Under the pieces are notes generated by a model. That model ran no database searches, was not told the DNA's origin, and saw nothing but the letters and a program-made list of their open reading frames with translations. From Rebecca billardiae RCC1528 (Eukaryota; Protista; Haptophyta), in NCBI GenBank assembly GCA_965240325.2, contig OZ251222.1, positions 4,340,001 through 4,404,000 on the forward strand: a DNA stretch of 64,000 nucleotides. Reading direction: 5' to 3'. Positions 9,737 through 52,170 of this stretch are shown here, in pieces. Made by a program: the position numbers and the translations under genes. Numbering within the stretch: the stretch's first letter is position 1; the number at the start of each line of letters is the position of its first letter.

Positions 9737-9777
<41 letters not shown>

Positions 9778-10876: not shown

Positions 10877-10909
<33 letters not shown>

Positions 10910-11742
10910 CCGCGCCGCTGCGCGTGCGCGCGCGCGCGCTGCTCGCCGCCGCCCTGGCGGCGCAGGGGCGGCATGCGGAGGCGGAGGCGGCGGCCGAGCA
11001 GGCGTGCGCGGAGGGTGGCGGCGCGCTCGCCGAGCCGAGCGCTGCCGCGCGCGAGGCGGCGCGCACGCTCGCGCGCGTGCAGCACAGCGCGCGAGAGGCG
11101 GCCGCGCGGCGCGACGCCGCGGCGGAGTCGCTGCCGCGCGCAACAGCCGCGGCCGACGCGGCCGCGGCCGAGGCGGCGGGCGCGCGGCGCGCGGCGGCTC
11201 GGCTCGCGGCGGAGGTCGAGCTGTGCGCGCGCGAGCTCGGCGAGGCCGACGCACGCCGCGCCGCCGACGCCACCGCCGCCGCCGCCTCGGCCGCGCGGCT
11301 GCGCGCGCTGCTCGGTGGCGCTGTGCTGCGGCTGCCGCCCGCGCGGCCGCAGCCGCACGGCGCGGGTGGCGCGCCCGCCGGCGGTGGCGGCGGCGGCGTG
11401 GCGCTTGCGGGCGTGCACCTCCTCCGCGCGCTCGGGCTTGGTGCGGGCCCGGCGGACGCGCGCTCGGCGCTCGGCCCGGCGCAGCTGCGCGGGCTCGAGC
11501 GCGCGGTGCGCCGCGGCGCCTCCGCAGCGCGCGCGCACGCGTCCGTGAGCGCGCTGCGGCAGCAGCTGCACGCGCTGGCGTACGATGTACACAGGCACGC
11601 GCTGGGCGGCGCGCTGTGGCGGGACGAGCTGCTCACCACGTTCGCCCGCGCGACGGCGGCGACGCACGTCAAGCCGATGCGGCCGGCACTTGCTGCGGGA
11701 GGGGCGCCGGGCGTCGAGACGCGCGCGCAGTCGAGGTCGTAG
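6019..11742 (+). CDS. Kinesin motor protein with an Ala-rich coiled coil and C-terminal TPR (kinesin light chain-like) repeats
   Basis: VFVRVRP, P-loop AYGQTGSGKT, QVYNESVFDLL, switch I NRHSSRSH, switch II LVDLAGSER and [23 protein letters not shown]. Downstream are repeats of the type AQGRHAEAEALARRAL, HGAEHAETL and LGAEHARTL. Confidence 0.9.
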
Positions 11743-15375: not shown

Positions 15376-15904
15376 CCGTTCGACGCGCGTCGCGAAGGGT
15401 TCGCCGCTGAAGGCAGATTCCCTCGGCACGGCCGCGCGCGTTGTGTGGCTTGCGTGAGGGCGAATCACCGCGGCGAGGTCCTTCGACTGAACCAGCATGC
15501 GTATCAGTGGTTCGTCTTTGTGAGACCGAACTGGGCGCGCCACGATGCCAGTCAAGCGCCAGTCAAAAAGCGCTGCAGTGGTTAGATAGAAGCGTGGAGT
15601 AGGAATCTCGGACGCGATTCCCGCCACGAGCTCGATACTTTATGACCAAATAGCAGCACCGAGCGCCACCAGAATGCGATCTTGCGAGCTCTTCCCGCCA
15701 ATGCCTTCATCAAACTTGCATGCTCTGAATTGATGACCTCACTTGACCTTCCGATCCGTTCAGTCTTGGTTCAGTCAAGTCTGGTGCTCCAGACCTTCGG
15801 CCGGCTTCGCCGAGCCAAGGGCCGCCGAGCGGCAAACGTGTTGAGTGCCGAACCGGAAGGACTGCCCGTTCGTCTCGGCTTCGAGCAGATTCGCGCCCAC
15901 CATC

Positions 15905-19522: not shown

Positions 19523-22160
19523 ATGGGCTGTGGTGCATCCACTGCGAAGGTCGCCACCGAGGAGGAGGATGCGCTCGAGATGACGCGTCCGCGCGCGGAC
19601 GGCGTCGTCCCGGCGGATGGCCGGACATGGAAGAACACGGGCAAGATGACGCCTGCCCGGGCGCTGACCGTGCTCGAGAACCGGTGGCCGAACATGGTGC
19701 TCAGATTCCCGCCGCTCGATCCGAACGAGCCGCCAGCGTACAAGGGTGACGACTGGGGCGATGACGTCACCTACGACTGTGCGCGCGCCGCCGCTGCACC
19801 CTTGGCTGAGCCCGCGCGCCGCCGCCGCTGCTGCGCGCCGCAGCCGCGCTCATCGCCGCGCGCGCGGCTTTCACGGACGCACAGGGGACTTTTATCACAA
19901 CGTGTGGACGTTCTACCCGTTCTCGTGGAGCGAGCCCGACCTGCTCCAGCTCCTCGCCCGCTTTGTGGCCGAGGCTGGGTTTGTGAGTGAGTTCAGTGTG
20001 CCCGAGGTCTGCGCACCAGTGCGCACCACATGGCGGCCGCGCCGCCATCTGCGCGGCGGGGAGCGGGGGGCGGGGGCGGGGAGGACGAGGCATGGGCGCG
20101 CGCGCGTGCGAGGCCCTCCCGCGTCCAGCGCCGCCGCTTCACGGCTCGGCGCGGCCGGGGCACAGCGACGCCGTTGGCTGACGCCGGCGCGCGCCGCGCC
20201 GCCCGCCCGCCGCTGCGATGCGGGCGCAGGACAAGCTCAGCGCCTTCCTCACGAAGGTGCACGCGCAGATGCACGCGCAGCCGTACCACAACTTCCAGCA
20301 CATCGTCGACGTGACGCAGTCGGTGTACATGTGCGTCGCGACGCCGACGGCCAGGGCGTTCCTCCCCGCCACGCACCGCTTTGCCGTGCTGCTCGCCGCC
20401 ATCTGCCACGATCTCGACCACCCCGGGTGCGCGCGCGGCGCGGCGCGGCGCGGCGCGGCGCGGCGGGGCGGAGCGCGAGCGCGCGCGGGCCGCGCGCCGC
20501 CGCCGCCTCGCCCCGCGCCCCGCCGCTCACCCCGCCCGCCACCGCCACCGCGCATGCCGCGCGCCGCGCGCGCGCGCCTCCGCCCCGCCGCCCCGCCGCC
20601 CCGCAGCTACACCAACCTCTACCTCAAAAACGAGGAGTCGGAGCTCACGAAGAAGTACGGGCCCGACGGCACGCTGGAGAAGGTGCGCGGGCGTCGCGCG
20701 GCGTGCGCGGCGTGCGCGGCGCCCGCGCGCGCGCCGGCTGGCCGCGTGGCCGCCGCTGCCCGCCCCGCCGTGCCGCCCCGGCGGCGCGCTGCGCGCGGCT
20801 CACGCGCCGCGCCGTGCGCGCGTCCGCGCCCGCAGCACCACGCCTCGCTCGCGTCCGTGCTGCTCACCGAGGAGGAGACGGACATCCTGGTGAACTGCTC
20901 GCCCGAGGCGCAGCGGGAGGTGTGCCGGCTAGTCGACAAGTGCATCCTCGCCACAGACATGTCAAGGCACAAGGTGCGCGGCACGGCTGCGCGGCGCGCG
21001 CGCGCACACGCGGCTGCGCGCGCGGTGCGCGCGGCGCGCGCCCCCGCGCGCGCGCGCTCACACGCGCACGCGCACTCCGCCCCCCCTTGCGCGCGCTCCC
21101 ACCCGCAGGCCATCGTGGACGACGTGACCGCGCTGATGCCGCAGAACTACGAGGAGATTGTGAAGACGCAGTCGGTCGTGAGGCGCGACAGCGTCAAGGA
21201 CCTGGGCAGCGCCAAGAAGGTGCGGCCGCGCGCACGCGCACGCGCACGCGCACGCGCACGCGCACGCGCACGCGCACGCGCACGCGCACGCGCACGCGCA
21301 CGCGCCGCGCACGCGCACGCGCACACGCACGGAAGGAAGAGGCGGCAGCCGCGCGGCTCACGCGCGCCGCGCCACGCGCCGCCCCCCGCGCGCGCACCTC
21401 CCCCCCGCGCAGAAGCCGGGCGACCTCTCGCTCCCGGCCTCGCCCGCCAAGGGCCAGGGGCGCAACATGATGTTCCAGCGCCGCCGCTCGTCGATCGACC
21501 GGATGATCCGCACGGGGCAGGTGGAGGCGGTGCTGCTGCTGATCATCAAGGCGGCGGACCTGTCCAACGTGACGCGCGGCGCGCACGCCAACGAGGTGCG
21601 CGCGGCGCGGCGCGCGACGGCTGCGCGCGCGCGTCGAGCGCTGAGCGCGCAGCCCCGCCGCTGCGCCCGGCCCCGCCGCCGCCGCTGCGCGCGCGCGCGC
21701 TCGCTCGCGCCCGCCGGTGCGCAGCGCTGGGTGAGCAAGATCTACAAAGAGTTCCACCGGCAGGGGCGCGCGGAGCTCGAGAAGCAATACCCGCTCTCGC
21801 CCGGCATGGGGCCCAACGACTCGGTCTCCAAGGGGCAGATCTTCTTCGGCGGCGTGATCTGCAGGCCCCTGTTTGTCATGTTGGCATCTTGCCTGCCAGA
21901 GGCCGGTGCGCAACAGCGCGCGCCGCGCGCGTGCGCCGCGCGTGTGCGCCCGGGCGGCGGCTGAGGCGCCGGCGTGCGATGGCGCGACCCGGGGCTCACT
22001 GGCGGCCCTTGGCGCACGCGCGCGCGCCGCGCGCGTGGCCGCAGGCGTCTTTCTCGACCAGCTCGACGAGAATCTCGAGCGCTGGAAAAAGGTGGCGGCG
22101 GCGGAGGACGCGGCCAAAGCGGCAGCGGAGGGCGGCGGCGCCGAGGTGGGCAAAGCGTGA
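19523..22160 (+). CDS. Class I 3',5'-cyclic nucleotide phosphodiesterase (multi-exon), N-myristoylation/palmitoylation motif MGCGAS
   Basis: Exon pieces give PYHNFQHIVDV, AAICHDLDHPG, YTNLYL, LEK/HHAS, ILATDMSRH, IIKAADLSNV, WVSKIYKEFHRQG and KGQIFF. They are separated by GT..AG introns (e.g. 21220-21412). Confidence 0.9.
21231..21302. repeat. (CGCACG)n microsatellite, about 12 units, inside a PDE intron
   Basis: Directly visible tandem hexamer. Confidence 0.9.
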
Positions 22161-28912: not shown

Positions 28913-29704
28913 TCAGCGCGTCCACTGCGCGGCGCCTATCTCCGGGAGCACACGCACCTCCACGTCCCCGTACACCTGCGTGATGCACGCGAGGCGGTAC
29001 GAGCCGGGGTTCTCGCGCAGCGTGCTCGCCTCGTCGAGCGACTTGCGCGAGCACCGCTCGCCCCCGTCGCGCACGTCGACGATGCACGTCCCGCACAGCT
29101 GCTTGCCGTTACAGTTGGTCCAGCGCGTGAGCGAGCGGTACACGTTCACCTTGCGCTCGGTCAGCTCGTCGCGCAGGTTGCAGCCGGTGGGCGCGGTGAA
29201 GGCGAGGTCGGGCTGGCCGTCGCGCACGACGCGGATGCTCACCGTCGGTGGCAGCCCCTCGTACCCCACGGACTGCTGCAGCTCCTCGCGCCCGCCCCGG
29301 AACAGGGTGAGCCGCATGCTCTCGCCCTCGGCCTTGGACATCACTTCGGTCACCGCAGACATCTCCGCGCCGACGAGGTTGGTCGAGCCCACGCCGAGCA
29401 GCTGGTCGCCGATGGCGATCTCGCCGCACAGCTCCGCCGCGCCGCCGGGCACCAGCGCCAGCACGTACGGCCAGCATAGGCTGAGGTCGCATCCAAAGTC
29501 GATGCCGGTGCGTCGGTCGATGGTGACCGAGTAGATGCGGTCGTCCTTGGCGACAGGCCGGCCGCGGCCCTGGAGCGCGCGCCGTTCCAGGCGCGATGAG
29601 CCGGGCATGCGCGCCCGCGAGCTCGTCCAGGCGCCCACCGCGGGGAGGATCAGCGCAATCGCTGCGGCGAATGTCGCGGCGCGGGCGCGCGTTGAGGCAG
29701 CCAT
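28913..29704 (-). CDS. PDZ domain plus 2Fe-2S ferredoxin protein, probable bipartite plastid-targeting sequence
   Basis: Signal-like FAAAIALILPAVGA-W; PDZ-like TGIDFG..GGAAELCGEIAIGDQLLGV..LTLFR; ferredoxin NCNGKQLCGTCIV...YRLAC. Confidence 0.85.
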   Translation of the reverse strand: MAASTRARAATFAAAIALILPAVGAWTSSRARMPGSSRLERRALQGRGRPVAKDDRIYSVTIDRRTGIDFGCDLSLCWPYVLALVPGGAAELCGEIAIGDQLLGVGSTNLVGAEMSAVTEVMSKAEGESMRLTLFRGGREELQQSVGYEGLPPTVSIRVVRDGQPDLAFTAPTGCNLRDELTERKVNVYRSLTRWTNCNGKQLCGTCIVDVRDGGERCSRKSLDEASTLRENPGSYRLACITQVYGDVEVRVLPEIGAAQWTR

Positions 29705-29874
29705 TTTCGCCGGCGGGCGTCGACGCGCCGCGCGGCCGCCGCCAAGCCCAAACCCCAGTCCAGCCAATCAGAAAGGCGGGAGTCCGCGGAAGACCCGTAA
29801 TACCCTCGTCATCTGCAGTCTTCCTCCGCCATCACCACGTCGCTGGTCGCGGACCGGCAGCACGCGAACTCGCT

Positions 29875-30980
29875 ATGGCGTCGGCTCTCACCCCGCTGAT
29901 GAAGGCGCGCGTCGACCTCGCGGCAGTGTACCGGCTGCTTGACAAGATGCACCTCAACGAGGGCATCTGCAACCACCTCACGGCGATGGTGCCGGGCACG
30001 ACCGACCAGTTCCTCGTGATCCGGTATGGGCTGCTCTGGTCGGAGGTGACGGCGAGCAACCTCGTGCTGATCAACGCGGCCGGGAAGATCATCGAGGGCG
30101 AGGGCCCGGTCGAGACGACCGCCTTCGAGATCCACAAGGCCATCCACCTCGCCGACCCGGCCAAGTACCAGTGCGTGCTGCACACGCACATGCCGTACCT
30201 CTCGACGCTCTGCTGCATCGAGCCGATGGAGCTCAAGGCGCGCGCGCGCGCACGGCCGCCGCCGCGGGGGCGCGCGGGTGGGGATGCGTTCGGCATGGCG
30301 CCTCGTCCGCCCACCCGCCGCCCCGCCCTCCGTGCCTCCCTCCCCGCCCCGCGCAGATGGTGCACCAGAACTCGTGCAGGTTCTACGAGAACGTCGCGTA
30401 CGACCCGCAGTTCAACGGGCTGGTGCTCGACGACAAGGAGGGCGAGCGCCTGGCCAAGGTGCCGCGCGTGCGCGCCACGCTGGCCGCCCGCGCCGCGCGC
30501 GCCGGCGTGACCGCGCTCCCGCCCCACGCGCCGCCCCCCGCGCGCGCCCCCAGATGATGGGCGGCAAGACTGTGCTGATGCACCGCTCGCACGGCGTGAT
30601 CGTGTGCGGCGCGACCGTCGCCGCGGCGTTCGACGACCTCTACTACCTCGAGCGCGCGGCGCAGCTGCAGGTGATGGCGCTGAGCACGGGTGCGCAGATC
30701 TCGCTCGTCGACCCCGAGACGGTGCGCGCGCTTATGCGCCCCCAGCGCGACGCGGCGCACGGCCATGGACGCGCGCGCCCCTTGATTGACGCGCGCTCCG
30801 TCCTCGCGCCCGCCCCCGCCGCAGTCCAAGCACGTCAAGGAGCAGATGGACGCCGGCAAGCTGGAATGGGCCGAGCAGCACCTCGAGGCACTCAAGCGCC
30901 AGTTGGGTCGGGAAGACCCGGAGTGGCCTGGGCTCAACGGCTGCGGCGCTGAGAACGGCGGCAAGCGCGCACGCAAGTAG
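29875..30980 (+). CDS. Class II aldolase/adducin family protein (candidate DsyD-like DMSHB decarboxylase); 4 exons
   Basis: DLAAVYRL..LNEGICNHLTAMVPG, FEIHKAIH, CVLHTHMPY and HRSHGVIVCG..AAAFDDLYYLERA. Introns are 30238-30356 (GC-AG), 30459-30553 and 30722-30824. The family call is firm; the substrate is inferred. Confidence 0.88.
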
Positions 30981-32547
30981 GCGACAGCTGGGGCGAGCAC
31001 CGACGCTCCCATGCCCCTGTCGGCACCGCCGTGGGCTTGCTCGCCATTGTATCCTACTGCTCAAGCTCCTCTGTTGTTGCTGTATACTACCACGACATCT
31101 ACTACGACATCAGCGCGCGGCCGCGCGCGCTGAGGCAGCCGCAGCTGCCAGTGAGCTGGGCCGCGGCAGCATGGGCCATGGCGGTGCCGCCCGCGCCGCG
31201 GGCGGTCGTGTACGTGATGGCAGTCGTGGCTCTTGTGGAGTTGTGCCGACAGTCTACAATTATCACAGACACAGGACCGCCCTAGATTGCCGAGTCAGTC
31301 GACACTGCATGACTCATAGTCACAGACAGTACAGAGTGTCGGCACTGTCGCCGGCGGGCGGCGATTGTCAATAATGTCATTGACGTGACTCGACGATTCG
31401 GATGATGCACGGTAGTCGAGTGCCCTGACTAATGGCCTGACTATTTAGTTTGAGCTGGCACCAGCAGTAGTTACTTTCATTATTCATATATATATATTAT
31501 TTCGTCTAATATTGAGTTTCTATTATAAACGGGACCGCACGCGGACCGACACAGTGGCCCCATTCAAAACAGTCGTCCGTACTCTGTGATTAATGAGGAA
31601 GTCGGAGGACCTAGCTACTGGCATCATCGTTTTATTTCCGTATACGAGCCAGCGGCCCAGTGACGGCAACATGCCGACGACATTCATCGATCGCCCGACT
31701 AATCTGGCACTGGCAGCAGCCTGTGGCCCGCTAGGCGCTAGCGCCAGGAAGTTCGGGGAAGGACCGAGCAGCTGCTGCATGTGCTCAGTGCTGATGAATA
31801 ACTACTACACTTTCTACTTATTACTTATACATAGCAGTGCGACGCGATCGCTTGCGTCCGTCGGACCAAAGTGATTAGTGAATGCAGTAGATCGAATGAA
31901 AGGATTCGATCAGATCATCAAATCATCAAGATATTGAAACTATATTATTATAAGATTATATTATATATAATATGTTGAAAGGCGGCCTGGTTGAGTGGTT
32001 CGGGTCTGGCGAATCATCGGAATGGCCGAATGACGACCACGTCCACTGCACGGCTGCACGCGGTGGCCCGAAGGCCGGACCGCTACATCGGGATACGAAC
32101 TTTACATCCGCCGCCGATATATATATAGCTAGCTAGTATACAGCGCGTCGTTGCTCTCTCGCGTCGCGTTCACTGCATAGGTTGACGCTGACTGCCGAGC
32201 TCCAGCACGCCGTGATCGGCGTGACAAGCGGATCCCGCCCACAGTCTGCAGCACCGCCCGCATGCCGCGCCAGTTGCGATTGGCACGGCTGCCGTCGTGT
32301 GCGGCTCGTGCGTGTTCGAGTTGTATGCAATGGACTCCGTTTCGCAGCAGGGTGCGTCGAGCCGGTGGTCGATGGGATCGGAATGAGCCGCAGCGCAGCG
32401 CACAGCCATCAGCCGCGCTGCAGCAGCCGGGTTGCAGTCGCAAGAGTACAGCCCGTCGCGTGGGCCGTCCGCCGGCGCGGCAACGCGGCGTGGGCCGCCT
32501 CGCCCGATGCTGCACTGCCGAGTGCCGGGCGGGCCGCCGCGCGCCGC

Positions 32548-33447
32548 TTAGAAGACCGGGCCTTCCTTGCGGCAGCCGAAGATGCCCCATGCGAACACCG
32601 CCTTGTCGTTTTGGATGTCGACGCGCTGGGTGAGCGAGTCCATCCATTTGTCGAGGTACTCGTTTGTCACGCCCTCCGAGATCATCGCTGCGCGGTGCGT
32701 GTTGATCTGGTCCACCATCGACTGGAAGTAGTGCTTGAGGTGGTCGGAGAAGTCGAGGAAGCTCACGTCGCGGTACCCGGCGTCGACGAGCAGCTGGCGG
32801 TACTCCGACGGCCGCGCCATCTTGGTGGTGGCGTTGCGGTCTGTGAAGTCCTTGAGCGCCTTCTCGTCGGCGCCGTCCGCGCCCATGATGTCGGTGAAGA
32901 CGAACGCACCGCCCGGCTTGAGCACGCGCTTGAGGTCCTTGAGCAGCGCCGGCTTGGACGCGGCGTGGCACAGCACCTCGCACGAGATCACGTGTGTGAA
33001 CTTCTCCGACCAGTCCGCGGGCAGGCCGTCGTTGAAGTTGCCGAGGATCACCTCGTTCTTGTCGCCGACGCCGCGCGCTTTTGCCTCGTCCTGGTTCATC
33101 TTGTTCTGCTCGGGCGAGATGTTCATGCCAATCACCTTGCAGCCAAAGCGCTCGATCAGCTCGTGCGAGATGCCGCCGTGGCCAGAGCCAAGATCGAGGA
33201 CGAGCGAGTCGGCGGTGACGGGCCGCATCCAGTCCAGCGAGGTGAGCAGGCGCGCGTTCGTCTCCTTCGACGACTCGTACACGCCGTCCGACGCCTTGCG
33301 GAACACGCCGTAGTGAATGTCCATCCCACCGCCGCCCATCACGTACTTATAGAACGTGCGCGCGTGCGCGAGGTCGTACTGCTCGACCACCTTGTCGGCG
33401 ACCTCGGTCTCGGCGAACTGCTTATCTTTGAAGTCTCCAGTCGACAT
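32548..33447 (-). CDS. SAM-dependent methyltransferase, sarcosine/dimethylglycine-MT-like fold (candidate DSYE/DsyG-type MTHB S-methyltransferase)
   Basis: Intronless, 299 aa from ATG 33447. Motifs: FYKYVMGGGGMDIHYG, motif I VLDLGSGHGG, GMNISPEQN, SCEVLCH, KRVLKPGGAFVFTD and C-terminal AWGIF. Confidence 0.9.
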   Translation of the reverse strand: MSTGDFKDKQFAETEVADKVVEQYDLAHARTFYKYVMGGGGMDIHYGVFRKASDGVYESSKETNARLLTSLDWMRPVTADSLVLDLGSGHGGISHELIERFGCKVIGMNISPEQNKMNQDEAKARGVGDKNEVILGNFNDGLPADWSEKFTHVISCEVLCHAASKPALLKDLKRVLKPGGAFVFTDIMGADGADEKALKDFTDRNATTKMARPSEYRQLLVDAGYRDVSFLDFSDHLKHYFQSMVDQINTHRAAMISEGVTNEYLDKWMDSLTQRVDIQNDKAVFAWGIFGCRKEGPVF

Positions 33448-34621
33448 GGCTGTGCGTGTGTGAAGGCGCGAGGCGACGACTCGGGGTGCGCGACAACGGG
33501 AGAGCAGCGCGCGGACGGTCGAACACGTGGTTGACACGATGAGAATCAGCGTCTAGCGCCAACAAGCGTCGGCCACGGATCTCTTTGCGAGCTCCCCAAA
33601 TGAGGGTCCGGAGACCGAGCGTGAGTCCGGGAGCGCTCTTGGCATCCACGCTCGAGATTCAATCTCGCAACGGGTGGGTCACCCAGCGAGTCCCGACGCA
33701 CCCAGCCTGGTCCGGCGTGGGGGCGATAATCAGAGTGCGAGGGATCACAGCGAGCCCAGCTTCGCCCTCTTGCTCATCCGCCCAGCGCTTTCCAGCGGTG
33801 TGCGGCGCTATCGCCTCCTCCGCGGCCGCCGCCGAATCAAAGCCAAGGTCTGCTTGACTTCCCTCGGCCTCAAGATGGTCCGGGAAGCTTTATGAGGAGC
33901 TTCGGAAGATTTTCCCGGACAAAATTCTGCACATACGGTAGAAGTTTCAGATTTGTGCCGCTCGGCTGATGAAATCTCGTACCCCCATACAACTCACAGA
34001 TGACTGTAGTTATTTTTTCTGATGAGCGTCGTACCCGTCTCATGTCTGCTGCATCATACCATCTCTCACAGAGGCTTCAGTCAGAGTGGCGGGTGGGGCC
34101 GAAAAGGCACAAATGCAACGTATTCGGGGTGGGCTAACGAGGTGATTGTAGGTGATTACCGCGGGTGGAGTCAGATGTAGCTAGCTATCAGGAGGTGTGA
34201 TGCTTCTTATGCTTCTTACCCGCCGGCCGTTCATGGATAATTGGTTAAAAGCGGGCGCCAAACCAGATTCAGAAGGAGATTCGCCCTGATTCAGGGATCT
34301 CAGGGCCTTCTCCCGGCTTCGGACATCGTTACGACCCGGGTCGCAGGTAGGCGGGGCCCGGCGCACCACCTGCCGCACGGCGTCAAGATCCTGGGCCGCA
34401 TCTTTTCGGTGACGCGGAGTGACGCGGCCCAGCGTCCGCTGCGCCTCGTCGATTCGGAGCGCCACAGAACTCCTCGCGAACGGGTCAACCTCGAAGCGGG
34501 TGGCGACGACCTCGCCGCTCTAGATCCACTCGCAGAGCGCGCTCCTCCCGCCCACACAGGGCTCCGCCGACACGGCGAATTCGGGCGAAACTAGCACCCG
34601 CCTCACCACCAGGCCGCTGAG

Positions 34622-35737
34622 ATGCCTGTCCTGTCCCCTCGCCACCCGTCCTTCCTTGTCGTCGGCTCGGGCTGCGTCGGCTCGTACCTTGCGACGACCC
34701 TCGGCAAAAACGGCGCGTCGGTAACGCTGAAGGCGCGCGGCCCGCCGAAGACGCCCATCGCGAAGCTCGCAGCGAAGGCCGGCGTCGAGGTCGTCACCGA
34801 CCTCGCCCCGCTCGCACGAGCCATCGGCGCGGGCGATCGGCCGCCGCTCGACGCCATCTTTGTCGCCACAAAAACATACAGCTTCGAGGATGTCGCGAAC
34901 CAGCTGGTCGAGGCGGGGCCGTCGCTGCGGCCGCAGCTCGCCACCGTCGGCTGCTACAACGGCCACGTGCTCGGCGCCAAGGACCTCTTTGGCCAAATTG
35001 GCGCGGGCAGCTCCGCGGGCCCGTCGGTGTTCTGCAAGGCGCTCGTCCCGGGCGGCTACTCGATCAAGGAGGACGGCTCGGGGTTCAACGTGACGAACGC
35101 GGGCCAGAAGTGGTCCCTCCTCTCGACCACGCCCGAGGTGCGTCAGCTCGCCAAGCACATGGCCTCGTACGGCGTCGCCACCGTCGCCGGCGGCTTTGAG
35201 GCGGACACGCGCAAGTACCTCGTGAACAACACCGCAAACCTGGTCTCCGTGATCGCAAACACCAACTGTAACGGGCTGATCAACGACCCGGCGCTGCTCG
35301 CGCGGATGCGCTCCATCTTCCGCGAAACAGCGGAGGTGCTGCGAGCCGCGCCCGCGCACCGCGAGCACTTCCCCTCCGCCATCTCGCTCGACGAGCTCGA
35401 GGAGCAGGTGTTGAGCGGCATTGCGTCCTACGCCGAGCACTACCCGTCGTCGTGCAAGGACTTCCGCGCGGGCCAGCCGATCGAGGTGAGCTCGCTGAAC
35501 GGGTACATCTGCGCGCTGGGCGAGCAGCTGGGCATGGACACGCCGGTCAACAAGGCCGTCGTCGACGACGTCTCCATCGTCCTCCGCCAGCACCAGCAGC
35601 AAAATGCGGACGCCGAGGAGGCGGAGCGCGCGCCAACTGCGCCAAAACCGCAGCTGCCCGAGGCGCGCATCCGGCGCGGGCTCGGCGCGCGCATCGTGCC
35701 CGAGCAGCCGGCGTCAATGACGGTAACTCGGCGCTGA
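34622..35737 (+). CDS. Ketopantoate reductase (ApbA/PanE) family 2-oxoacid reductase (candidate MTOB reductase)
   Basis: Rossmann motif LVVGSGCVGSYLA, IFVATKTYS, YNG, RKYLVNNTAN (catalytic Lys region) and PSSCKDFRAGQPIEVSSLNGYI (ApbA_C signature). Confidence 0.85.
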   Translation: MPVLSPRHPSFLVVGSGCVGSYLATTLGKNGASVTLKARGPPKTPIAKLAAKAGVEVVTDLAPLARAIGAGDRPPLDAIFVATKTYSFEDVANQLVEAGPSLRPQLATVGCYNGHVLGAKDLFGQIGAGSSAGPSVFCKALVPGGYSIKEDGSGFNVTNAGQKWSLLSTTPEVRQLAKHMASYGVATVAGGFEADTRKYLVNNTANLVSVIANTNCNGLINDPALLARMRSIFRETAEVLRAAPAHREHFPSAISLDELEEQVLSGIASYAEHYPSSCKDFRAGQPIEVSSLNGYICALGEQLGMDTPVNKAVVDDVSIVLRQHQQQNADAEEAERAPTAPKPQLPEARIRRGLGARIVPEQPASMTVTRR

Positions 35738-46152: not shown

Positions 46153-48211
46153 ATGCCACCGGGCGGCCTGGGCGGTTCCGGCGGCGTCGCCGTGGGCGCC
46201 GCCACTCGGGCCCCGCCCGCCAACGACCCCGGGCCCACGTCCAGATCGAAAGAACCCTACACCATCTCCTTCCCCAGCCTCGTCCGACAGATCCGCGCGA
46301 CTGTCACCGACAGCGCGCAGCTCGAAAGCGTGCAGGCCTTGGTGGATGACTTTGCAGACCGCCGCGTCGAGCCGGCGAGTGTGCAGCAACGACTGTCTCA
46401 GATCGTCGGCAAATCGGTGGTGCGATCGGCAATATCCACGCTGATCCGTGCGCGCAAGCAGGCGGCTGTGGATGATGGTGCGCGCCCTGCGGCCACCGGC
46501 GCCGTCTCTGCGCGCGCTCAGAATGCGCGCCTGCGCGCGCATGCCGTGCGGGCATGCATGCGTGCCGCACAACGCTCCAACCGCCCCACCCGCCGCCCGT
46601 GGGCGTCGTGCCTACCGCTCTGGCCGTGCGCGCCGCCGCGCAGGCGATGTTGCCACCAAGCGGCCGCGCCTGAACGGCGCGACTGACGTGAGCAGCGCGA
46701 CCACGGCCGAGCGCAAGCTCGCGCGCCGCAACAGCGAGGCCGTGTCCGAGGGGAGCTGGACGGACTCGCAGATGCGCATCGTGCGCGAGTCATCGTCGGA
46801 GCGCCTCGACCTGGCCTTCGACGGCGGCGCGGGCATGCAGTGCACGGACGACGCGCCGCCCTCCGCGCAGCAGCCCGAGCTGCCCGCCACGGACGTGGAC
46901 GCGTACAGCCAGCTGCCGCCAGACACCTTCCGCACGCTGCTCGCGCACTCGGTGCGGTGCGACCAGGGGTCGTGCGAGCAGCCGTGGTGCGCGCGGCTGA
47001 AGAACAAGCTCAGCGCGCTGCAGAGGCTCGCCTCGCGCGCCTCGAGTGTCGCGGGCTCGTCCTCGGGCTGCGAGGTCAACTCCGGCAGCGCCGACGACGG
47101 GGGCAGCGGCAGCGGCGACGGCGACGGCGCGGGCAGCGGCGACGGCGACGGCGACGGCGCGGGCGCGGGCGCGACGCAGGGCGACCGGCCCGAGCCGGGC
47201 GGCAGCCCGGGCCGGCCGGAGTCGGGCGGCAGCCCGGGCAGCGGCGACGGCAGCGGCGACGGCAGCGGCGAGACGGACGGCCGGCTCGACGCGCCCGCGG
47301 CCGCCGCGCTGCCGTCCAACGCGACCGCCACCACGGCCGCGGCGCCAGGCGGCGCGCCCGGCGCGCCCGGCGCGCCCGGCGCGGGCCGCGCCGCGGGCGC
47401 TGGCGCGAGCGTGCTCGCCGCGCCGCTCAGCCTCGCCCCGCGCACGGGCTCCGCCGGCTCGGTGGGCTCGGCCGCCATCTCGCTGCCGCCCGCGCCCTCC
47501 GGGTTTGAGGAGACGCTGTGCCTGATGTACCAGCGGCTGCAGCAGTGGCGCGAGGACAACGCGGCGCCCGCGATGCCGCCGCTGCTGCGCTGCGCGTCGG
47601 GCAACGCGGACGTGATCGGCGCGCCGGGCGCAGCCGCGCCCAACCCCGCCGCCGCCGCCGCCGCCGCTGCGGGCGCCTCTGCCGGCGCAGCGGACTTGGC
47701 TGACAGCAACGCCGACGCGTCGACGGCGCCTCTGGACGCGCCGATGGCGATGGCGCCTCCGGATGTGCCGATGGCGCCTCCGCCGGCCACCGAGCCGCCC
47801 TCGGACGCGCCGATGCCGCCACCCGCCCCCGTGCTGCCGAGCATGCTCCTCCCGTCGGCCGCCGGCTGCATCGGTGCGCTCGGCGCGTCCGCTGCCGGGC
47901 CCGCCGGGCCGCCGCTTGCGCCGCCGTCGCTGACGACACCAGCGGCCGCCGGCGCCGACGTGGCGGCGGCCGCGGCTTCCGGCCCGAGCGAAGCGGTGGG
48001 CGGTGCCAGCAGCAGCGTGGCCGCCGTCGCGCCCGCGCCCGTGCCCGTCACGCCGCTGCTGCCCCCGCCCTCGTTCCTGCCGCCCCCGCCCGCGTGGATG
48101 GTGAAGGGCGGAGCCGCCGCGGCCGCGGCCGCTGGCAAGGACGCGGCCGCGCTGCCGCCCGCGCTCATCGCGCCGCCGATGAGCATCGAGCAGCTCTTCG
48201 GCAGCTCGGGC

Positions 48212-48248
<37 letters not shown>

Positions 48249-49663
48249 GCGACGGCGGCGGCACGCCCGACGCTGCCGCCGCCCCCCCCGCCGGCCCCGC
48301 CACCGCCGCCGAGCCGAGGTGCGGCCCCGAGAGCGCGCTGCCGGCCACGAGCGAGGAGCTGCGCTCTCGGCTCGGCACGCCCTTCTCCGTCGACGGCAAG
48401 CTCGGGCACCTGCGCTCGATGGCGAGCGCCAAGGGCATCCAGCTCGACCTGAACGGCAAGATGGCCGCCTCGCCCTCCCTCGCCGCGCTCATGCGCCTCG
48501 AGCAGATGCGCCAGGCCGACAGAAAGGCCGGCGGCGACGCTGAGGGTGGCGGCGCGCCAAGCGCCGGCGGCGCGCCGGGCGGCTCGGCCGCCGAGCCGCG
48601 CGAGCAGCCCGGCGTGGGCGGCGGCGCGGGCGCGGCGGCGCCGCCCGCCGACGCGGCCGGCGGCGCCGGCGCCACGCCGCGCGGCCAGCCGATGAGCCGC
48701 GGCATCAGCTTCGACGTCGACTCGAAGCTCTCCATGCTGCTCGGGCTGGACGTGGACGAGGCGGCGGACGCGAGCGCGCAGGTGAGCGCGCTCGCTGGTG
48801 GCGTGATCGCGGCCAAGCTGCCGATCGGGGGGGCGGCTCGCGCGCGCGAGCGCGGCGCGGCGGGCGGCGCGGCCGGGCTCTCGTCCGAGTTCGTCAACGC
48901 CAAGTCCAAGCGGCGCGCGCGCAGCGGCGCGCGCGCGAAGGCGGACAAGCCCGGCGAGCGCGCGGCCGCCGCCGCCGCCGCCGCCGCCGCCGCCTCGGCG
49001 GAGGCGACGGCCGTCAAGCCCGAGCCGCTCGCGCCCGCGCTCGGCGGGGACGAGGGCGCGGAGGCGGGGGCGGGCGTGGAGGAGGAGGACCCGGGCGCCG
49101 AGTACGAGGAGGGCGCGCTCGTCGAGGTGCTCGTCGACGGCGCCCTCGCCGCCGAGCACGCCGCGCAGCCCGGCGCGGACGGCCCGCCCTCGGCGCCCAG
49201 GCGCGGCGCGGGCGCGCGCCGCTGGGTGCCGGCCGTGATGGTCTCGTACGCGGGGCGCGCGCAGTACGACGTGCAGCTCGTGCGCGCACGCGCGGAGGAG
49301 GCGAGCCCGGCGGCGGACGGCGGCGCCGACGTGCTGTGCCAGCCCGTCGCCGAGCCCCCCGGCGCCGCGCCCGCGCCGAGCGGCGGCGCGGCGGCGGGCG
49401 CGCGCGCGCTCACCGCCGCGGCCGCGGCGGGCGGCGCGCGCACGCACGTGCACTCGACGTGCATGCGGCTGCGCTGCGCCGAGTGCACGCGGCACGCGCT
49501 CGAGGTGACCTCCGTCCCGACCTACTGCGACGGGTGCGAGCGCGTCCTCCGCCACCCGCTCCGCTCGTACATGGAGTTCGTCGCCGACATGCAGTTTGCG
49601 TGCGAGCAGGGCGCGGGCCTCACGGGCGCGCGGCTGTGCGTCACGTGCTTCCGCGGGCTGCAG

Positions 49664-49695
<32 letters not shown>

Positions 49696-52170
49696 GGCGG
49701 CGCAGCCCGCCGCGCCTCCGAGCGCCACGCTCACGCTCCACGGCGTGCCCATCCCCGCCGCCAGCTTCCGCGAGGTCGAGATCCGCCGGCGGCGCGCGGA
49801 CGGCGACGACGCGTCCTCCCTGAGCGAGGCGCAGAATTGGGTGCAGTGCGACGAGTGCGGCCACTGGCAGCACTGGGTGTGCGCCGGGTACAACCACGCG
49901 GCGCACGAGCGCGCGCGCGCCAAGGCCGGCGCGGACGCCGAGGAGCCGCCCTTCCACTGCGCCGCGTGCCGCTCCGCGCGCGGCGGCGCGGCGCGCTCGG
50001 TGCCGCACACGTCAGTGCTGCAGCTGCCAGAGACGGAGATGTCGCGCCGCATCGAGGCGGCGGTGGCGCGGGCGCTGGACGAGGCGGGCGTGCAGGCGGA
50101 CCCGATCTCCGTGCGCATCACCTCGGCGCACCCCGAGGTCTCCACCTCCAACCGCGCGATGGTCGAGCGCCGCTGGTCGTCGGGCGTCTCCTACCCGTGA
50201 GCGCGCGCCACGCGCCACGCGCCACGCGCCACGCGCCAAGCGCCAAGCGCCGCGCCGCGCCGCGCCGCGCCGCGCGGCAGCGCGCGCCGCGCGCGTGCTC
50301 GGGCGCGATGGTGCTCACCCGCGCGTGCCCGCGCGCGTCCCCCGCCCCGCCGCGCGTCCGCAGCTCCGAGTTCCCGTACGTCTCGCGCTGCATCATCGGC
50401 GTGCAGCGCCAGCCCCTCGGCGAGGTGCTCCTCTTCTGCATGTACGTGCAGGAGTACGGCCCCCGCTGCCCCGCGCCAAACACCAACCGGCTCTACATCT
50501 CCTACCTCGACAGCGTGCGCTACCTGCAAGCGGAGGTGCGCGCAAGAAGGGGCGGGCGCGCGCGCGGGCGGGCGGGGGGAGAGGCGCGCCGCCGCGCGGG
50601 CGCTGCGCCCGCGGTGCTCACGCGCGCACCTCCGCCCCTGCCCCCCCCCCCTCCCGGCGCCGCCCCCGCGCCGCGCCGCCGTGTGTGCGCGCGCGCAGCC
50701 GGCGGGTCAGCGCACGCTCGTGTACCACACGCTGATGGTCGAGTACCTGGCGCTGGCGCGGCTGCGCGGCTTCGAGCACGTGCACGTGTGGGTCGAGCCG
50801 CCCAAGAACGGGCAGGAGTACATCTTCCACTGCCGCCCAGCGCAGGACCGGCTCAAGCCGATGAAGCGCGACGTGAGCGCGCGGCGCATGGCGCGCGCGC
50901 GCCGCGCCGCGCCGCGCTGCACCCCGCCGACGCCGCCGCGCCCGCCCCCCCGCCCGCCCCCTCCCCGCGTGCGCAGGTGCTGCACGCGTGGTACCTCAAG
51001 TTCCTCTCCGCGGCCAAGGGCGCGGGCGTGCTGCTGCGGTACGGCGGGATGGCGGAGGAGTTCGCCTCGATCACCTCCGCCTCGCAGATCCCGATGTTCC
51101 ACGGCGACCAGTGGGAGGTGACGGTGCCGGACCTCGCAAAGCAGCAGCAGCAGCAGAGCCGGCACAAGGCGGGGCCGGTCGGGCTGCGGCCGGCGGCGGC
51201 GGCGGCGGACGCGCCCGCGGCCGACGAGGCGAGCGCGCTCATGCCGCCGCCGCCGCCGCCGCTCGCCATGTCGCGCGCGGGGTGCGGCGCGCCTGGCGGC
51301 TCCGGCCTGGAGATGTGCCGCACGGTGTCCAAGGACCTCGTGTCGCAGCTGCACAAGTTCATGAAGCGGCTGCAGGGGCACTTCCTCGTCGGCACGCTCA
51401 GCCCGCCCGCCGCGTCGGACGAGCGGCTCGAGACGGCCGCGGAGGACGCGCGCGTGGCGTCGACGCTCTCGCCGCTCATGCAGAGCCGGCAGCGCCTGCT
51501 GCTCTACTGCCAGGCCAACGGGCTGCAGTTCTGCACGCTGCGGTGCGCGCGCTGCGCCGCACCGCACCGCTCGCACGCGCGCGGGCGGCGGCGCGAGCGC
51601 GGACCGCGCGCCACCGCGCCCTGCGCTCACACGGCACGCGCGCCCCGCGGCGCCCGCGGCGCACCCCGCAGCTACGCGCGCTACTCGACGATGCGCATCC
51701 TCGACGAGCTCGTGCACGGCACGCACGCGGAGGAGGGCGCGCAGCTCGGCGCGCCCGCGCTGGCCGCGCGCTACTGCACCGCAGAGTGCCGGCACGGCCG
51801 CGCCGACGTCGGCGTGCTCATGGTCGCGTGCGATCGCTGCGACAGCTGGGTGCACGTGCGTGCGACGCGCCGAGCGCGCGCATCGCATGTGCTCGCGATG
51901 TGCGCGCGGCGGCGCCGCGGCGTGCGCCCGCTCACCGCCGCGCCCGCGCCCCCCGCCGCCCCGCAGGCCGAGTGCGTCGGGCTGAGCGAGCGCGACGTGC
52001 CCCGCAGCTACGTGTGTCCGCAGTGCGCGCTCACAGCTCGTCAGGAGGCGCCCACAGACGCCGACGACGCCATGATGGGCCCCGTCCTCGCCTCCGGCCC
52101 CGCTGCCGCCGATCCCAACGCGGACGGTGCCGCCGATCGCGAGGGCAACGACCGCCCGCCGCCGTTATGA
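46153..52170 (+). CDS. p300/CBP-type (KAT11) histone acetyltransferase with an N-terminal RST-like domain, PHD fingers and a TAZ-like remnant (multi-exon)
   Basis: HAT motifs LFCMYVQEYG, NRLYISYLDSVRY, RTLVYH, VWVEPP..GQEYIFHCRP, LHAWY and IPMFHGDQW. PHD motifs WVQCDECGHWQHWVC and ACDRCDSWVH/AECVG..YVCPQC. The first intron, 46478-46643, joins the 46153 exon in frame. Confidence 0.85.

What the first reader, a model, noticed from the sequence alone, without database searches (positions are those of the whole stretch)
29875..35737. Candidate eukaryotic DMSP biosynthetic gene cluster: class II aldolase, methyltransferase and ApbA/PanE-type reductase
Seen in sequence: three consecutive enzyme genes within about 6 kb, namely a class II aldolase/adducin-fold protein, a sarcosine/DMG-MT-like SAM methyltransferase and a ketopantoate-reductase-fold enzyme. 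The last two are head-to-head. Established: the algal transamination route is Met -> MTOB -> D-MTHB (NADPH reductase) -> DMSHB (S-methyltransferase) -> DMSP (decarboxylation). Bacterial DsyGD fuses a methyltransferase to a class II aldolase-type decarboxylase domain, and algal DSYE enzymes are DsyG-related. Inference: this locus encodes the last three steps as a eukaryotic cluster, with DsyG-like and DsyD-like parts as separate neighbours plus a reductase. No aminotransferase is present in the window.
Basis: partly seen in the sequence, partly recalled or inferred. Interest (0 to 1): 0.95.

Follow-up and report, generated by a model that had tools for sequence, protein, structure and literature searches.

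The report
Candidate algal DMSP gene cluster around DSYE
A haptophyte alga keeps a proven DMSP-pathway methyltransferase gene (DSYE) between a 2-oxoacid reductase gene and an iron-oxygenase-like "aldolase" gene, and matching gene fusions in other algae make these two the best candidates so far for the two enzymes of marine DMSP synthesis that have never been identified in algae.

Summary
Window 29875-35737 holds a four-exon class II aldolase-fold gene (+), a one-exon methyltransferase (-) and a ketopantoate-reductase (KPR)-fold gene (+); the last two are head-to-head.

The methyltransferase is DSYE, not a sarcosine/dimethylglycine enzyme. It is 80% identical to the assayed Exanthemachrysis gayraliae clade D DSYE and groups with Pavlovales DSYE.

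The conclusion still gains independent support:
- The aldolase-like protein keeps a three-histidine metal site. Its nearest functionally characterised solved relatives are the iron oxygenases NovR and TqaM, which oxidatively decarboxylate 2-hydroxy acids. DMSHB to DMSP is that type of reaction.
- In diatoms DSYE lies next to a distantly related aldolase-like domain, alone or fused to a methyltransferase and a D-2-hydroxyacid dehydrogenase.
- A cryptophyte fusion adds a leucine/phenylalanine-dehydrogenase-like domain.
- Three proteins, one from Pinguiococcus, fuse a DSYE-like methyltransferase to a KPR relative.

Caveats: the Pavlovales linkage lies inside a larger syntenic block, it is absent from one Pavlovales genome and from the pelagophyte and other DSYE loci examined, and no activity was tested. 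I found no publication of this link.

The parts
28913..29767 (-). PDZ + 2Fe-2S ferredoxin-domain protein (284 aa). It is divergently paired with the aldolase-like gene, about 107 bp between the start codons. It may be a fourth member of the block.
   Evidence: PF17820/PF00595 PDZ and PF00111 Fer2. The same gene, with PDZ and Fer2 hits, sits in the same divergent position in D. lutheri L004:11802-12602 and in metagenome contig L011:4735-5451. tblastx gives 67-73% identity.
29875..30237 (+). Aldolase-like gene, exon 1: N-terminal half of the class II aldolase/adducin fold, including the H-x-H metal ligands (motif VLHTHMP).
   Evidence: PF00596 E 3.9e-20 and NCBIfam PRK06486 E 1.5e-37. It is 78% identical to D. 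lutheri KFE25_005247 residues 9-120. Splice model; His motif.
30357..30458 (+). Aldolase-like gene, exon 2.
   Evidence: tblastn to D. lutheri residues 120-154. The acceptor AG and GT donor fit. NCBIfam PRK06486 matches profile positions 134-171.
30554..30754 (+). Aldolase-like gene, exon 3, with the third metal histidine (motif HRSHGVIV). The 3' boundary is approximate.
   Evidence: PF00596 E 1.4e-07 at profile positions 135-183. tblastn to D. lutheri residues 156-223. In the alignment the window has a roughly 9-residue excess at the exon 3/4 junction, so the true donor may lie some tens of bases upstream.
30831..30980 (+). Aldolase-like gene, exon 4: C-terminal helix and stop codon (30978-30980). 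The 5' boundary is approximate.
   Evidence: tblastn to D. lutheri residues 217-247; best-scoring splice model.
32548..33537 (-). DSYE, the MTHB S-methyltransferase, clade D. The conserved core starts at Met31 (33447). The first 30 codons look like a possible targeting presequence.
   Evidence: It is 80% identical to P0003, the E. gayraliae MMETSP1464 protein that was assayed as clade D DSYE. It is about 72% identical to P0014, the representative of the 90% cluster that contains the assayed N. inconspicua DSYE KAG7362955.1. It falls in the Pavlovales DSYE clade with SH-aLRT 94. The SDMT equivalog is not reached.
33538..34621 (.). Intergenic region of about 1.1 kb between the divergent DSYE and KPR genes. 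I presume it is a shared bidirectional promoter.
   Evidence: Inferred from gene positions only. The same divergent arrangement is seen in L004 and L011.
34622..35737 (+). KPR (ApbA/PanE)-fold NAD(P)H 2-oxoacid reductase; candidate MTOB reductase.
   Evidence: PF02558 + PF08546. TIGR00745 scores 100 bits, below its 141-bit cut-off. It belongs to a narrow clade: 7 representatives at E <= 1e-30 among 1.84 billion. It is 65% identical to the D. lutheri neighbour of DSYE. Among its relatives are three DSYE-like methyltransferase + KPR fusions.

Best explanation
The locus is a four-gene block of a Pavlovophyceae-type haptophyte: PDZ-ferredoxin (-), aldolase-like (+), DSYE (-), KPR (+).

Shown: the methyltransferase is an orthologue of assayed DSYE enzymes, which methylate MTHB (4-methylthio-2-hydroxybutyrate) to DMSHB (4-dimethylsulfonio-2-hydroxybutyrate) with S-adenosylmethionine.

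Inferred:
1. The KPR-fold enzyme is the NAD(P)H-dependent reductase that turns MTOB (4-methylthio-2-oxobutyrate) into D-MTHB. KPR-family enzymes reduce 2-oxo acids to D-2-hydroxy acids.
2. The 'class II aldolase' is not an aldolase. It is a three-histidine non-haem iron oxygenase of the NovR/CloR/TqaM kind. It would bind the carboxylate and 2-hydroxyl of DMSHB on the metal and use O2 to remove C1 as CO2, giving DMSP. This would be the oxidative decarboxylation step, whose algal enzyme is unknown.
3. The first step, methionine to MTOB, is encoded elsewhere.

The block would then cover steps 2 to 4 of the transamination route.
For: DSYE identity:
- 80% identity to the assayed E. gayraliae protein, and about 72% to the representative of the 90% cluster that holds the assayed N. 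inconspicua protein.
- It sits in the Pavlovales DSYE clade.

Aldolase-like protein as an oxygenase:
- The H-x-H and H-G histidines are conserved.
- An AlphaFold model of the 70-78% identical D. lutheri orthologue has pLDDT 93.9.
- After an uncharacterised structural-genomics protein (3ocr), its best PDB matches are NovR (TM 0.88), TqaM (0.87-0.89) and pyruvic oxime dioxygenase (0.82-0.84). True fuculose-phosphate aldolase reaches only 0.67.
- TqaM and CloR/NovR carry out O2-dependent oxidative decarboxylation of 2-hydroxy acids on a three-histidine iron site, and TqaM accepts only 2R substrates (PMC13351049; PMC13111500).
- DMSHB to DMSP is described as an oxidative decarboxylation (PMC10989797).

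Independent linkage in diatoms:
- DSYE is the immediate neighbour of a methyltransferase + 2-Hacid_dh + Aldolase_II single-ORF fusion in L005, L012, L013 and L014. The orientations and the flanking genes differ between these loci.
- DSYE is next to a stand-alone copy of that aldolase domain in L007 and L009.
- Adjacent gene numbers in Nitzschia sp. Nitz4 and in a Bacillariaceae genome bin show the same pairing.

Fusions:
- The fusion family occurs across diatoms, in Chromera velia and in the cryptophyte Baffinella frigidus.
- The Baffinella protein adds an N-terminal leucine/phenylalanine-dehydrogenase-like domain (PDB 6acf, E 1e-20). One polypeptide would then hold deamination, reduction, methylation and decarboxylation.

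KPR:
- Three proteins fuse a DSYE-like methyltransferase (35-44% identical to the window DSYE) to a KPR domain about 30% identical to the window KPR by BLASTP. They are P0461/P0593 from Pinguiococcus pyrenoidosus, P0463 and P0465.
- The reductase next to DSYE is KPR-type in Pavlovales and 2-Hacid_dh-type in diatoms. Two different folds with the same chemistry in the same context suggest the same role.
- KPR-family members include general D-2-hydroxyacid dehydrogenases (references listed).

The same four-gene order is found in D. lutheri and in metagenome contig L011.
Against: - No enzyme activity or expression data were available. All functional assignments for the KPR and the aldolase-like protein are inferences.
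- Window and D. lutheri are collinear well beyond the block, from 28.9 kb to about 44.8 kb. Conservation inside Pavlovales could therefore be plain inherited synteny.
- Pavlovales sp. CCMP2436 keeps the TPR gene and DSYE but has no KPR or aldolase-like gene within 10 kb. Its aldolase orthologue is on another contig.
- No such neighbours were found at DSYE loci of two pelagophytes (L006, L008), at L010, or at L015-L017.
- The diatom aldolase domain is only about 25% identical to the Pavlovales one and falls in a different NCBIfam subfamily, PRK07044 against PRK06486. The diatom evidence supports the fold and the chemistry, not orthology.
- The PRK06486 subfamily is common in soil and freshwater bacteria at 47-54% identity, with no conserved or DMSP-related context.
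- No named prymnesiophyte (DSYB-bearing) orthologue appeared among the best 120 hits.
- DSYE may carry a presequence that the other two proteins lack, which could place them in different compartments.
Confidence: 0.5

Rival explanations
1. Only DSYE belongs to the DMSP pathway. The KPR and aldolase-like genes are unrelated neighbours kept together in some Pavlovales by ordinary inherited synteny. The KPR would serve pantothenate or general 2-oxoacid metabolism, and the aldolase-like protein would keep whatever role its bacterial PRK06486 relatives have.
For: - Collinearity between the window and D. lutheri extends over at least 16 kb and about seven genes, not just the block.
- Linkage is lost in Pavlovales sp. 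CCMP2436.
- It is absent in pelagophyte and other DSYE loci.
- The PRK06486 family has at least 594 bacterial relatives, mostly from non-marine habitats, with no DMSP context.
Against: - DSYE is also adjacent to an aldolase-fold gene or fusion in at least six diatom loci with different flanks and orientations.
- DSYE-like methyltransferase + KPR fusions exist.
- Fusions of methyltransferase, 2-hydroxyacid dehydrogenase and aldolase-like domains exist, with or without an amino-acid dehydrogenase domain.
- Chance would have to bring the same three enzyme types together repeatedly.
- The window KPR belongs to a very narrow clade and falls below the PanE family cut-off, which is unlike a housekeeping pantothenate enzyme.
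Confidence: 0.25
2. The three genes do work together, but not as proposed. For example, the oxygenase-like protein might decarboxylate MTHB or another 2-hydroxy acid rather than DMSHB, giving 3-methylthiopropionate or another product. Alternatively, the set might make or recycle a different small zwitterion, and the reductase might prefer another 2-oxo acid.
For: - Substrate specificity cannot be read from sequence.
- The TqaM and KPR families are substrate-promiscuous.
- The methyltransferase domains of the fusions lie outside crown DSYE and have not been assayed.
- The authors of PMC10989797 left 'TpMMT-like' larger proteins out of their analysis as of unknown function.
Against: - DSYE orthologues methylate MTHB in assays (PMC11306096).
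- To my knowledge (not checked with the tools), the sequence deaminate, reduce, methylate, oxidatively decarboxylate is known only from the DMSP transamination route. The Baffinella four-domain protein matches it step for step.
Confidence: 0.15
3. The aldolase-like gene is a true class II aldolase-family enzyme of sugar-phosphate or methionine-salvage metabolism. An MtnB-like methylthioribulose-1-phosphate dehydratase, for instance, would feed MTOB into the pathway rather than finish it.
For: - MtnB has the same fold, and methionine salvage ends in MTOB (established pathway knowledge).
- There are weak NCBIfam hits to mtnB and FucA.
Against: - TIGR03328 (mtnB) scores about 20 bits against a cut-off of 137.
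- FucA models score about 22-26 bits against cut-offs of 264-400.
- The structural neighbours are iron oxygenases, and FucA reaches TM 0.67 only.
Confidence: 0.05

Closest known systems
DSYE (algal MTHB S-methyltransferase; Wang et al. 2024, PMC11306096), clade D of Pavlova/Exanthemachrysis
   Same: The window methyltransferase is 80% identical to the assayed E. gayraliae DSYE. It is about 72% identical to the cluster representative of the assayed N. inconspicua DSYE. It has the same single Methyltransf_11 domain and length and falls in the same clade.
   Different: Nothing of substance differs; it is a new orthologue. The paper text I searched says nothing about the genomic neighbours of algal DSYE.
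DsyGD of Gynuella sunshinyii (bacterial methyltransferase-decarboxylase fusion with an adjacent predicted MTOB reductase)
   Same: The logic is the same: the S-methyltransferase is physically linked to a decarboxylase candidate and a reductase candidate.
   Different: DsyD is PF04115, ureidoglycolate-lyase-like. The window protein is PF00596, the class II aldolase fold. The genes are separate here, not fused. The Gynuella reductase showed no activity in that study, and its family is not stated in the text I read.
TqaM and NovR/CloR (class II aldolase-fold, three-histidine non-haem iron oxygenases)
   Same: The fold matches (TM 0.87-0.89 for the orthologue model) and the three metal histidines are conserved. 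Their reaction type is the one needed: O2-dependent oxidative decarboxylation of a 2-hydroxy acid to the acid one carbon shorter, and TqaM is specific for the 2R isomer.
   Different: Sequence identity is only about 25%. Their substrates are beta-amino or aromatic 2-hydroxy acids in fungal and actinomycete secondary metabolism. Activity on a sulfonium 2-hydroxy acid is untested.
Diatom, cryptophyte and Chromera fusion proteins (methyltransferase + D-2-hydroxyacid dehydrogenase + Aldolase_II, with or without a Leu/Phe-dehydrogenase-like N-terminus); probably the 'TpMMT-like larger proteins' set aside in PMC10989797
   Same: They hold the same three enzyme types as the window block, and in diatoms they sit next to DSYE.
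   Different: They are fused rather than clustered. The reductase is 2-Hacid_dh-fold, not KPR-fold. The aldolase domain is a different subfamily (about 25% identity; PRK07044-like). Their methyltransferase domain lies outside DSYE. That they are the published TpMMT-like proteins is my inference; I could not fetch those accessions.
Ketopantoate reductase PanE/ApbA and the KPR-family D-2-hydroxyacid dehydrogenases (Lactococcus PanE, Enterococcus D-mandelate dehydrogenase, Pseudomonas KPR2)
   Same: It has both ApbA domains and the conserved YPS..D and E..LNGY segment seen in solved KPRs. The family chemistry is 2-oxo acid to D-2-hydroxy acid.
   Different: It scores below the PanE family cut-off (100 against 141 bits). 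It is very distant from solved KPRs (best E 1e-6). Its clade is narrow and includes methyltransferase fusions.

Membership tests
DSYE (MTHB S-methyltransferase) | Groups with experimentally ratified DSYE sequences. The authors' own criterion is at least 40% identity and at least 70% coverage to ratified sequences. | tested here: met
   80% identity over 88% of the query to E. gayraliae MMETSP1464 (P0003). About 72% identity to P0014, the representative of the 90% cluster that contains KAG7362955.1. Pavlovales clade SH-aLRT 94.
DSYE (MTHB S-methyltransferase) | Single-domain S-adenosylmethionine methyltransferase (PF08241) of about 300 aa | tested here: met
   PF08241 E 1.3e-15. 299 aa from Met31, 329 aa from the first ATG.
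DSYE (MTHB S-methyltransferase) | S-adenosylmethionine-dependent methylation of MTHB to DMSHB | not testable with these tools
   This needs an enzyme assay. It has been shown for orthologues in PMC11306096, Table 1.
Sarcosine/dimethylglycine N-methyltransferase (NCBIfam NF041675) | Score at or above the equivalog cut-off (550 bits) | tested here: not met
   148.4 bits.
DsyD (DMSHB decarboxylase domain of DsyGD) | PF04115 ureidoglycolate-lyase-like domain | tested here: not met
   The paper defines DsyD as PF04115. None of the Pfam scans of the finding's gene products (the methyltransferase, the KPR gene, three aldolase-region ORFs and the PDZ-Fer2 gene) lists PF04115; the aldolase-like exons match PF00596 only.
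Class II aldolase/adducin superfamily (PF00596) | Domain match and metal-binding histidine triad | tested here: met
   PF00596 on exons 1 and 3. The D. lutheri orthologue reaches the PRK06486 cut-off, 270.6 against 269 bits. H-x-H and H-G motifs are conserved.
Class II aldolase-fold non-haem iron oxygenases (NovR/CloR, TqaM, pyruvic oxime dioxygenase) | Closer in structure to these than to sugar-phosphate aldolases; three-histidine site | tested here: met
   Foldseek TM 0.82-0.89 against 0.67 for FucA, using the model of the 70-78% identical orthologue P0121. Histidines. The model is of the orthologue, not of the spliced window protein.
Class II aldolase-fold non-haem iron oxygenases (NovR/CloR, TqaM, pyruvic oxime dioxygenase) | Fe(II)- and O2-dependent turnover; oxidative decarboxylation of a 2-hydroxy acid | not testable with these tools
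   This needs biochemistry. Substrate-pocket residues were not compared.
MtnB (methylthioribulose-1-phosphate dehydratase, TIGR03328) | Score at or above the equivalog cut-off (137 bits) | tested here: not met
   About 20 bits.
2-dehydropantoate 2-reductase (PanE/ApbA, TIGR00745) | ApbA N- and C-terminal domains | tested here: met
   PF02558 E 7.6e-09 and PF08546 E 7.8e-22.
2-dehydropantoate 2-reductase (PanE/ApbA, TIGR00745) | Score at or above the family cut-off (141 bits), implying ketopantoate as substrate | tested here: not met
   100.4 bits. All equivalog models fall far below their cut-offs.
Eukaryotic metabolic gene cluster for DMSP | Linkage of the pathway genes conserved beyond what background synteny explains | tested here: inconclusive
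   Within Pavlovales the block lies in a larger collinear region and is broken in CCMP2436. Across lineages the same enzyme types are repeatedly adjacent or fused, but with non-orthologous reductase and aldolase-like parts.
Eukaryotic metabolic gene cluster for DMSP | Co-expression and a shared product | not testable with these tools
   No expression or metabolite data were available.

The most novel reading that the evidence does not exclude
The two enzymes missing from algal DMSP synthesis since the pathway was drawn are these. The MTOB reductase would be a KPR-fold enzyme in Pavlovales and a 2-Hacid_dh-fold enzyme in diatoms. The DMSHB decarboxylase would be a class II aldolase-fold, three-histidine iron oxygenase. 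Diatoms, a cryptophyte and Chromera would then carry multi-domain 'DMSP synthases' that perform three or all four steps in one polypeptide. The proteins previously dismissed as 'TpMMT-like, function unknown' would be these enzymes.
Probability: 0.4. Interest if true: 0.9.

Novelty: new variant of a known kind. Interest (0 to 1): 0.8.

Why it matters
[quoted passage not shown] In algae only the methyltransferase step (DSYB, DSYE, TpMMT) has known genes. The 2024 DSYE paper states that knowledge of the decarboxylase step is still lacking, and a June 2026 review names no algal reductase or decarboxylase.

This locus and the fusions it led to give concrete candidate genes for both missing steps. 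They also give a chemical mechanism with solved structural precedents (TqaM, NovR). Both candidates can be cloned and assayed directly.

If confirmed, the pathway could be engineered. Predictions of DMSP producers from sequence data would rest on three markers rather than one. The class II aldolase-fold oxygenases would gain a globally important primary-metabolic role.

Tried and rejected
- DsyD homology of the aldolase-like gene was rejected. DsyD is PF04115.
- A glycine-betaine (SDMT) role for the methyltransferase was rejected on the NCBIfam score and on identity to assayed DSYE.
- MtnB and true aldolase roles were rejected on scores and on structural neighbours.
- I looked at bacterial genome context of the PRK06486 subfamily to read its function. 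In 80 loci I found no conserved operon. An rpoC/GNAT neighbourhood appears in about 16 loci and a KPR gene two genes away in 4 loci. This was uninformative.
- A metagenome scan with the methyltransferase + KPR fusion alignment found only methyltransferase-only relatives. L015-L017 are 53% identical to the window DSYE and have no reductase or aldolase-like gene nearby.
- An aminotransferase search in the window found none among the long coding-like ORFs.
- I could not verify that the fusion methyltransferase domain is TpMMT-like, because no TpMMT sequence was available through the tools. I rely on the statement in PMC10989797.
- I tried to read Chambellon et al. 2009 (Lactococcus PanE). The paper is not held. 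Its activity on 2-keto-4-methylthiobutyrate is my recollection only.
- The N-terminal 455 aa of the Nitzschia fusion has no Pfam or PDB match. It is homologous only to the Baffinella dehydrogenase-like N-terminus (E 6e-17), and its glycine-rich nucleotide-binding motif is degenerate.

Full report
**1. What is there**

The window is about 70% GC eukaryotic DNA. Real genes stand out by GC3 of about 0.9.

- A class II aldolase/adducin-fold gene lies on the + strand. Pfam PF00596 hits two of its exons. Fitting it to the intron-less Diacronema lutheri orthologue gives four exons: 29875-30237, 30357-30458, 30554-~30754 and ~30831-30980. The product is 271 aa and the first intron has a GC donor. The exon 3/4 junction is uncertain by a few tens of bases.
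- A single-ORF methyltransferase lies at 32548-33537 on the - strand.
- A ketopantoate-reductase (KPR, ApbA/PanE)-fold gene lies at 34622-35737 on the + strand.

A fourth gene, encoding a PDZ plus 2Fe-2S ferredoxin-domain protein (28913-29767, -), is divergently paired with the aldolase-like gene. I found no aminotransferase among the long coding-like ORFs of the window.

**2. The methyltransferase is DSYE**

- Its best named relative is the Exanthemachrysis gayraliae MMETSP1464 protein, at 80% identity. That protein is listed as a functional clade D DSYE in Wang et al. 2024 (PMC11306096).
- It is about 72% identical to the representative of the Nitzschia inconspicua cluster that contains KAG7362955.1, an assayed clade E DSYE.
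- In a maximum-likelihood tree it sits in a Pavlovales clade (SH-aLRT 94) with E. gayraliae, D. lutheri and Pavlovales sp. CCMP2436. That clade lies beside the diatom DSYE sequences, with pelagophyte DSYE further out.
- The NCBIfam sarcosine/dimethylglycine model scores 148 bits against a cut-off of 550.

The host is therefore a Pavlovophyceae-type haptophyte. According to the same paper, that lineage lacks DSYB and uses DSYE.

**3.

The paper defines DsyD as a PF04115, ureidoglycolate-lyase-like domain. It is not a class II aldolase. The same paper says that knowledge of the decarboxylase step is still lacking. It also reports that the predicted reductase next to dsyGD had no detectable activity. 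A June 2026 review names no algal reductase or decarboxylase. Full-text searches that combined DMSP terms with class II aldolase, adducin, 2-hydroxyacid dehydrogenase, ketopantoate reductase or non-haem iron found nothing relevant.

**4. What the 'aldolase' looks like**

- The D. lutheri orthologue is 70-78% identical to the window exons. It passes the NCBIfam PRK06486 cut-off and scores only about 20 bits on MtnB and FucA models.
- The three metal histidines (H-x-H and H-G) are conserved.
- An AlphaFold model of the orthologue is confident, with pLDDT 93.9.
- After an uncharacterised structural-genomics protein (3ocr), its nearest solved structures are the non-haem iron oxygenases NovR (TM 0.88), TqaM (0.87-0.89) and pyruvic oxime dioxygenase (0.82-0.84). 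E. coli fuculose-phosphate aldolase reaches only 0.67.
- TqaM has a class II aldolase-related fold and a three-histidine metal site. It binds the carboxylate and 2-hydroxyl of a (2R)-2-hydroxy acid on the metal and uses one O2 to remove C1 as CO2 (PMC13351049).
- CloR/NovR do the same to a mandelate-type intermediate (PMC13111500).
- DMSHB to DMSP is described as an oxidative decarboxylation of a 2-hydroxy acid (PMC10989797, citing Gage et al. 1997).

The fold therefore has direct precedent for exactly the chemistry that is missing. Only the title of that paper was seen here.

**5. Linkage within Pavlovales**

- D. lutheri (L004) and a metagenome contig (L011) have the same order: KPR, DSYE, aldolase-like, PDZ-Fer2.
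- The window and D. lutheri are, however, collinear over a longer stretch, from window 28.9 kb to about 44.8 kb.
- Pavlovales sp. CCMP2436 keeps the neighbouring TPR gene and DSYE, but has no KPR or aldolase-like gene within 10 kb. Its aldolase orthologue is on another contig.

On its own, Pavlovales synteny is weak evidence.

**6. Independent evidence from other lineages**

*Diatoms.* In N. inconspicua the gene next to DSYE is one uninterrupted 1219-aa ORF. It contains a methyltransferase domain, a D-isomer 2-hydroxyacid dehydrogenase and an Aldolase_II domain. The same pair is adjacent in three further diatom-type contigs (L012, L013, L014). Orientations and flanking genes differ among these loci. 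In L007 and L009 a stand-alone copy of that aldolase domain, 81-87% identical to the Nitzschia domain, abuts DSYE. Gene numbering in Nitzschia sp. Nitz4 and in a Bacillariaceae genome bin shows the same adjacency.

*Spread of the fusion family.* It is found in pennate and centric diatoms (Seminavis, Amphora, Cylindrotheca, Skeletonema, Thalassiosira, Cyclotella), in Chromera velia and in the cryptophyte Baffinella frigidus. Eighty-one of the 84 fusion proteins from the database search could be checked for the H-L-H-T-P motif and the third histidine, and all 81 keep both; the other three lack the search motif. The separately translated L005 copy of N. inconspicua has Asp in place of the third histidine.

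*Four-domain protein.* The Baffinella protein has an additional N-terminal domain. It matches leucine and phenylalanine dehydrogenases over most of their length (PDB 6acf, E 1e-20). Read in pathway order, that single protein would deaminate an amino acid to the 2-oxo acid, reduce it, methylate it and oxidatively decarboxylate it. That is the DMSP transamination route with a dehydrogenase in place of the aminotransferase. The N-terminus of the Nitzschia fusion is homologous to this domain but degenerate.

*KPR fusions.* The window KPR belongs to a very small clade: 7 representatives at E <= 1e-30 in 1.84 billion proteins. Among its relatives are three proteins that fuse a DSYE-like methyltransferase to a KPR domain. 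The methyltransferase part is 35-44% identical to the window DSYE. The KPR part is about 30% identical to the window KPR by BLASTP. They are P0461/P0593 from Pinguiococcus pyrenoidosus, P0463 and P0465.

*Published hint.* PMC10989797 notes 'TpMMT-like' diatom proteins that carry extra domains and are of unknown function, and sets them aside. These are probably the fusion family. I could not confirm this, because neither TpMMT nor those accessions could be fetched.

**7. What weakens the case**

- The diatom aldolase domain is only about 25% identical to the Pavlovales protein and best matches a different NCBIfam subfamily. The parallel is one of fold and chemistry, not orthology.
- The two reductases are of different folds. 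That fits non-orthologous replacement at the same step, but it is also what unrelated neighbours would look like.
- DSYE loci of two pelagophytes, L010 and L015-L017 have no such neighbours.
- Close relatives of the Pavlovales aldolase-like protein (54-66% identity) occur in pelagophytes, Tetraselmis, Cymbomonas and Polarella. They also occur at 47-54% identity in hundreds of mostly non-marine bacteria with no informative context. The subfamily as a whole is therefore not DMSP-specific.
- No named prymnesiophyte orthologue was in the best 120 hits.
- Nothing here measures activity or expression.

**8. Verdict**

- DSYE is an already known enzyme (confidence about 0.95).
- The claim that its neighbours encode the MTOB reductase and the DMSHB oxidative decarboxylase is a well-motivated inference, which I put at about 0.5.
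- I found no report of this linkage or of the fusion architecture in the searchable literature.
- The decisive experiments are simple enzyme assays.

Noticed in passing
window 28913-29767 (-); L004:11802-12602; L011:4735-5451: A PDZ + 2Fe-2S ferredoxin-domain protein is divergently paired with the aldolase-like gene in all three Pavlovales-type loci. A ferredoxin next to a putative iron oxygenase could serve it by keeping the iron reduced, but this is speculation.
   Followed up: partly
window 33448-33537 (-): The DSYE ORF extends 30 codons upstream of the conserved start. This stretch is rich in Arg, Ser, Thr and Ala. The E. gayraliae transcript also has an in-frame upstream extension. It may be an organelle-targeting presequence. 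The KPR and aldolase-like proteins show none.
   Followed up: no
window 30238-30356: The first intron of the aldolase-like gene seems to use a GC rather than a GT donor. The D. lutheri orthologue has no introns at all.
   Followed up: partly
L005:4853-8512 (-), aldolase domain: One N. inconspicua copy of the fusion has Asp in place of the third metal histidine (NDG instead of NHG). The other copy (P0300) keeps NHG and lies on a contig of the same recorded length (3.17 Mb) as the one carrying the assayed DSYE.
   Followed up: partly
L005:7148-8512 (-) and P0417 residues 1-420: The long N-terminal region of the diatom fusions has no Pfam or PDB match. It is homologous to the Leu/Phe-dehydrogenase-like domain of the Baffinella fusion, and its glycine-rich nucleotide-binding motif is degenerate. 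It may be an inactivated domain.
   Followed up: partly
L001 (Pavlovales sp. CCMP2436 MU631670.1) 5713-10001: Between the conserved TPR gene and DSYE, where the window and D. lutheri have the KPR gene, this genome has only a 150-aa gene with no domain hit. The KPR gene seems to have been lost or moved.
   Followed up: partly
P0473 (768 aa, representative library): This is a fusion of a KPR domain with a 2-hydroxyglutaryl-CoA dehydratase D-component domain. It is a different pairing of a 2-oxoacid reductase with a 2-hydroxyacyl-processing enzyme.
   Followed up: no
L052:7263-8303 (-) and three other bacterial loci: In 4 of about 75 bacterial loci a KPR-family gene lies two genes from the PRK06486-type aldolase-like gene, with a GNAT acetyltransferase between them. 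The numbers are too small to tell whether this is meaningful.
   Followed up: partly
window 5953-11739 (+); 13543-15639 (-); 21182-21961 (+); 2-2584 (-); 61442-62662 (-); 46445-50197 (+): Other genes in the window are a kinesin with a very GC-rich 1929-aa ORF, an RCC1-repeat protein, a cyclic-nucleotide phosphodiesterase fragment, an SdiA-regulated/metallophosphoesterase protein and a BNR-repeat protein. There is also a 1251-aa ORF with no domain hit.
   Followed up: partly
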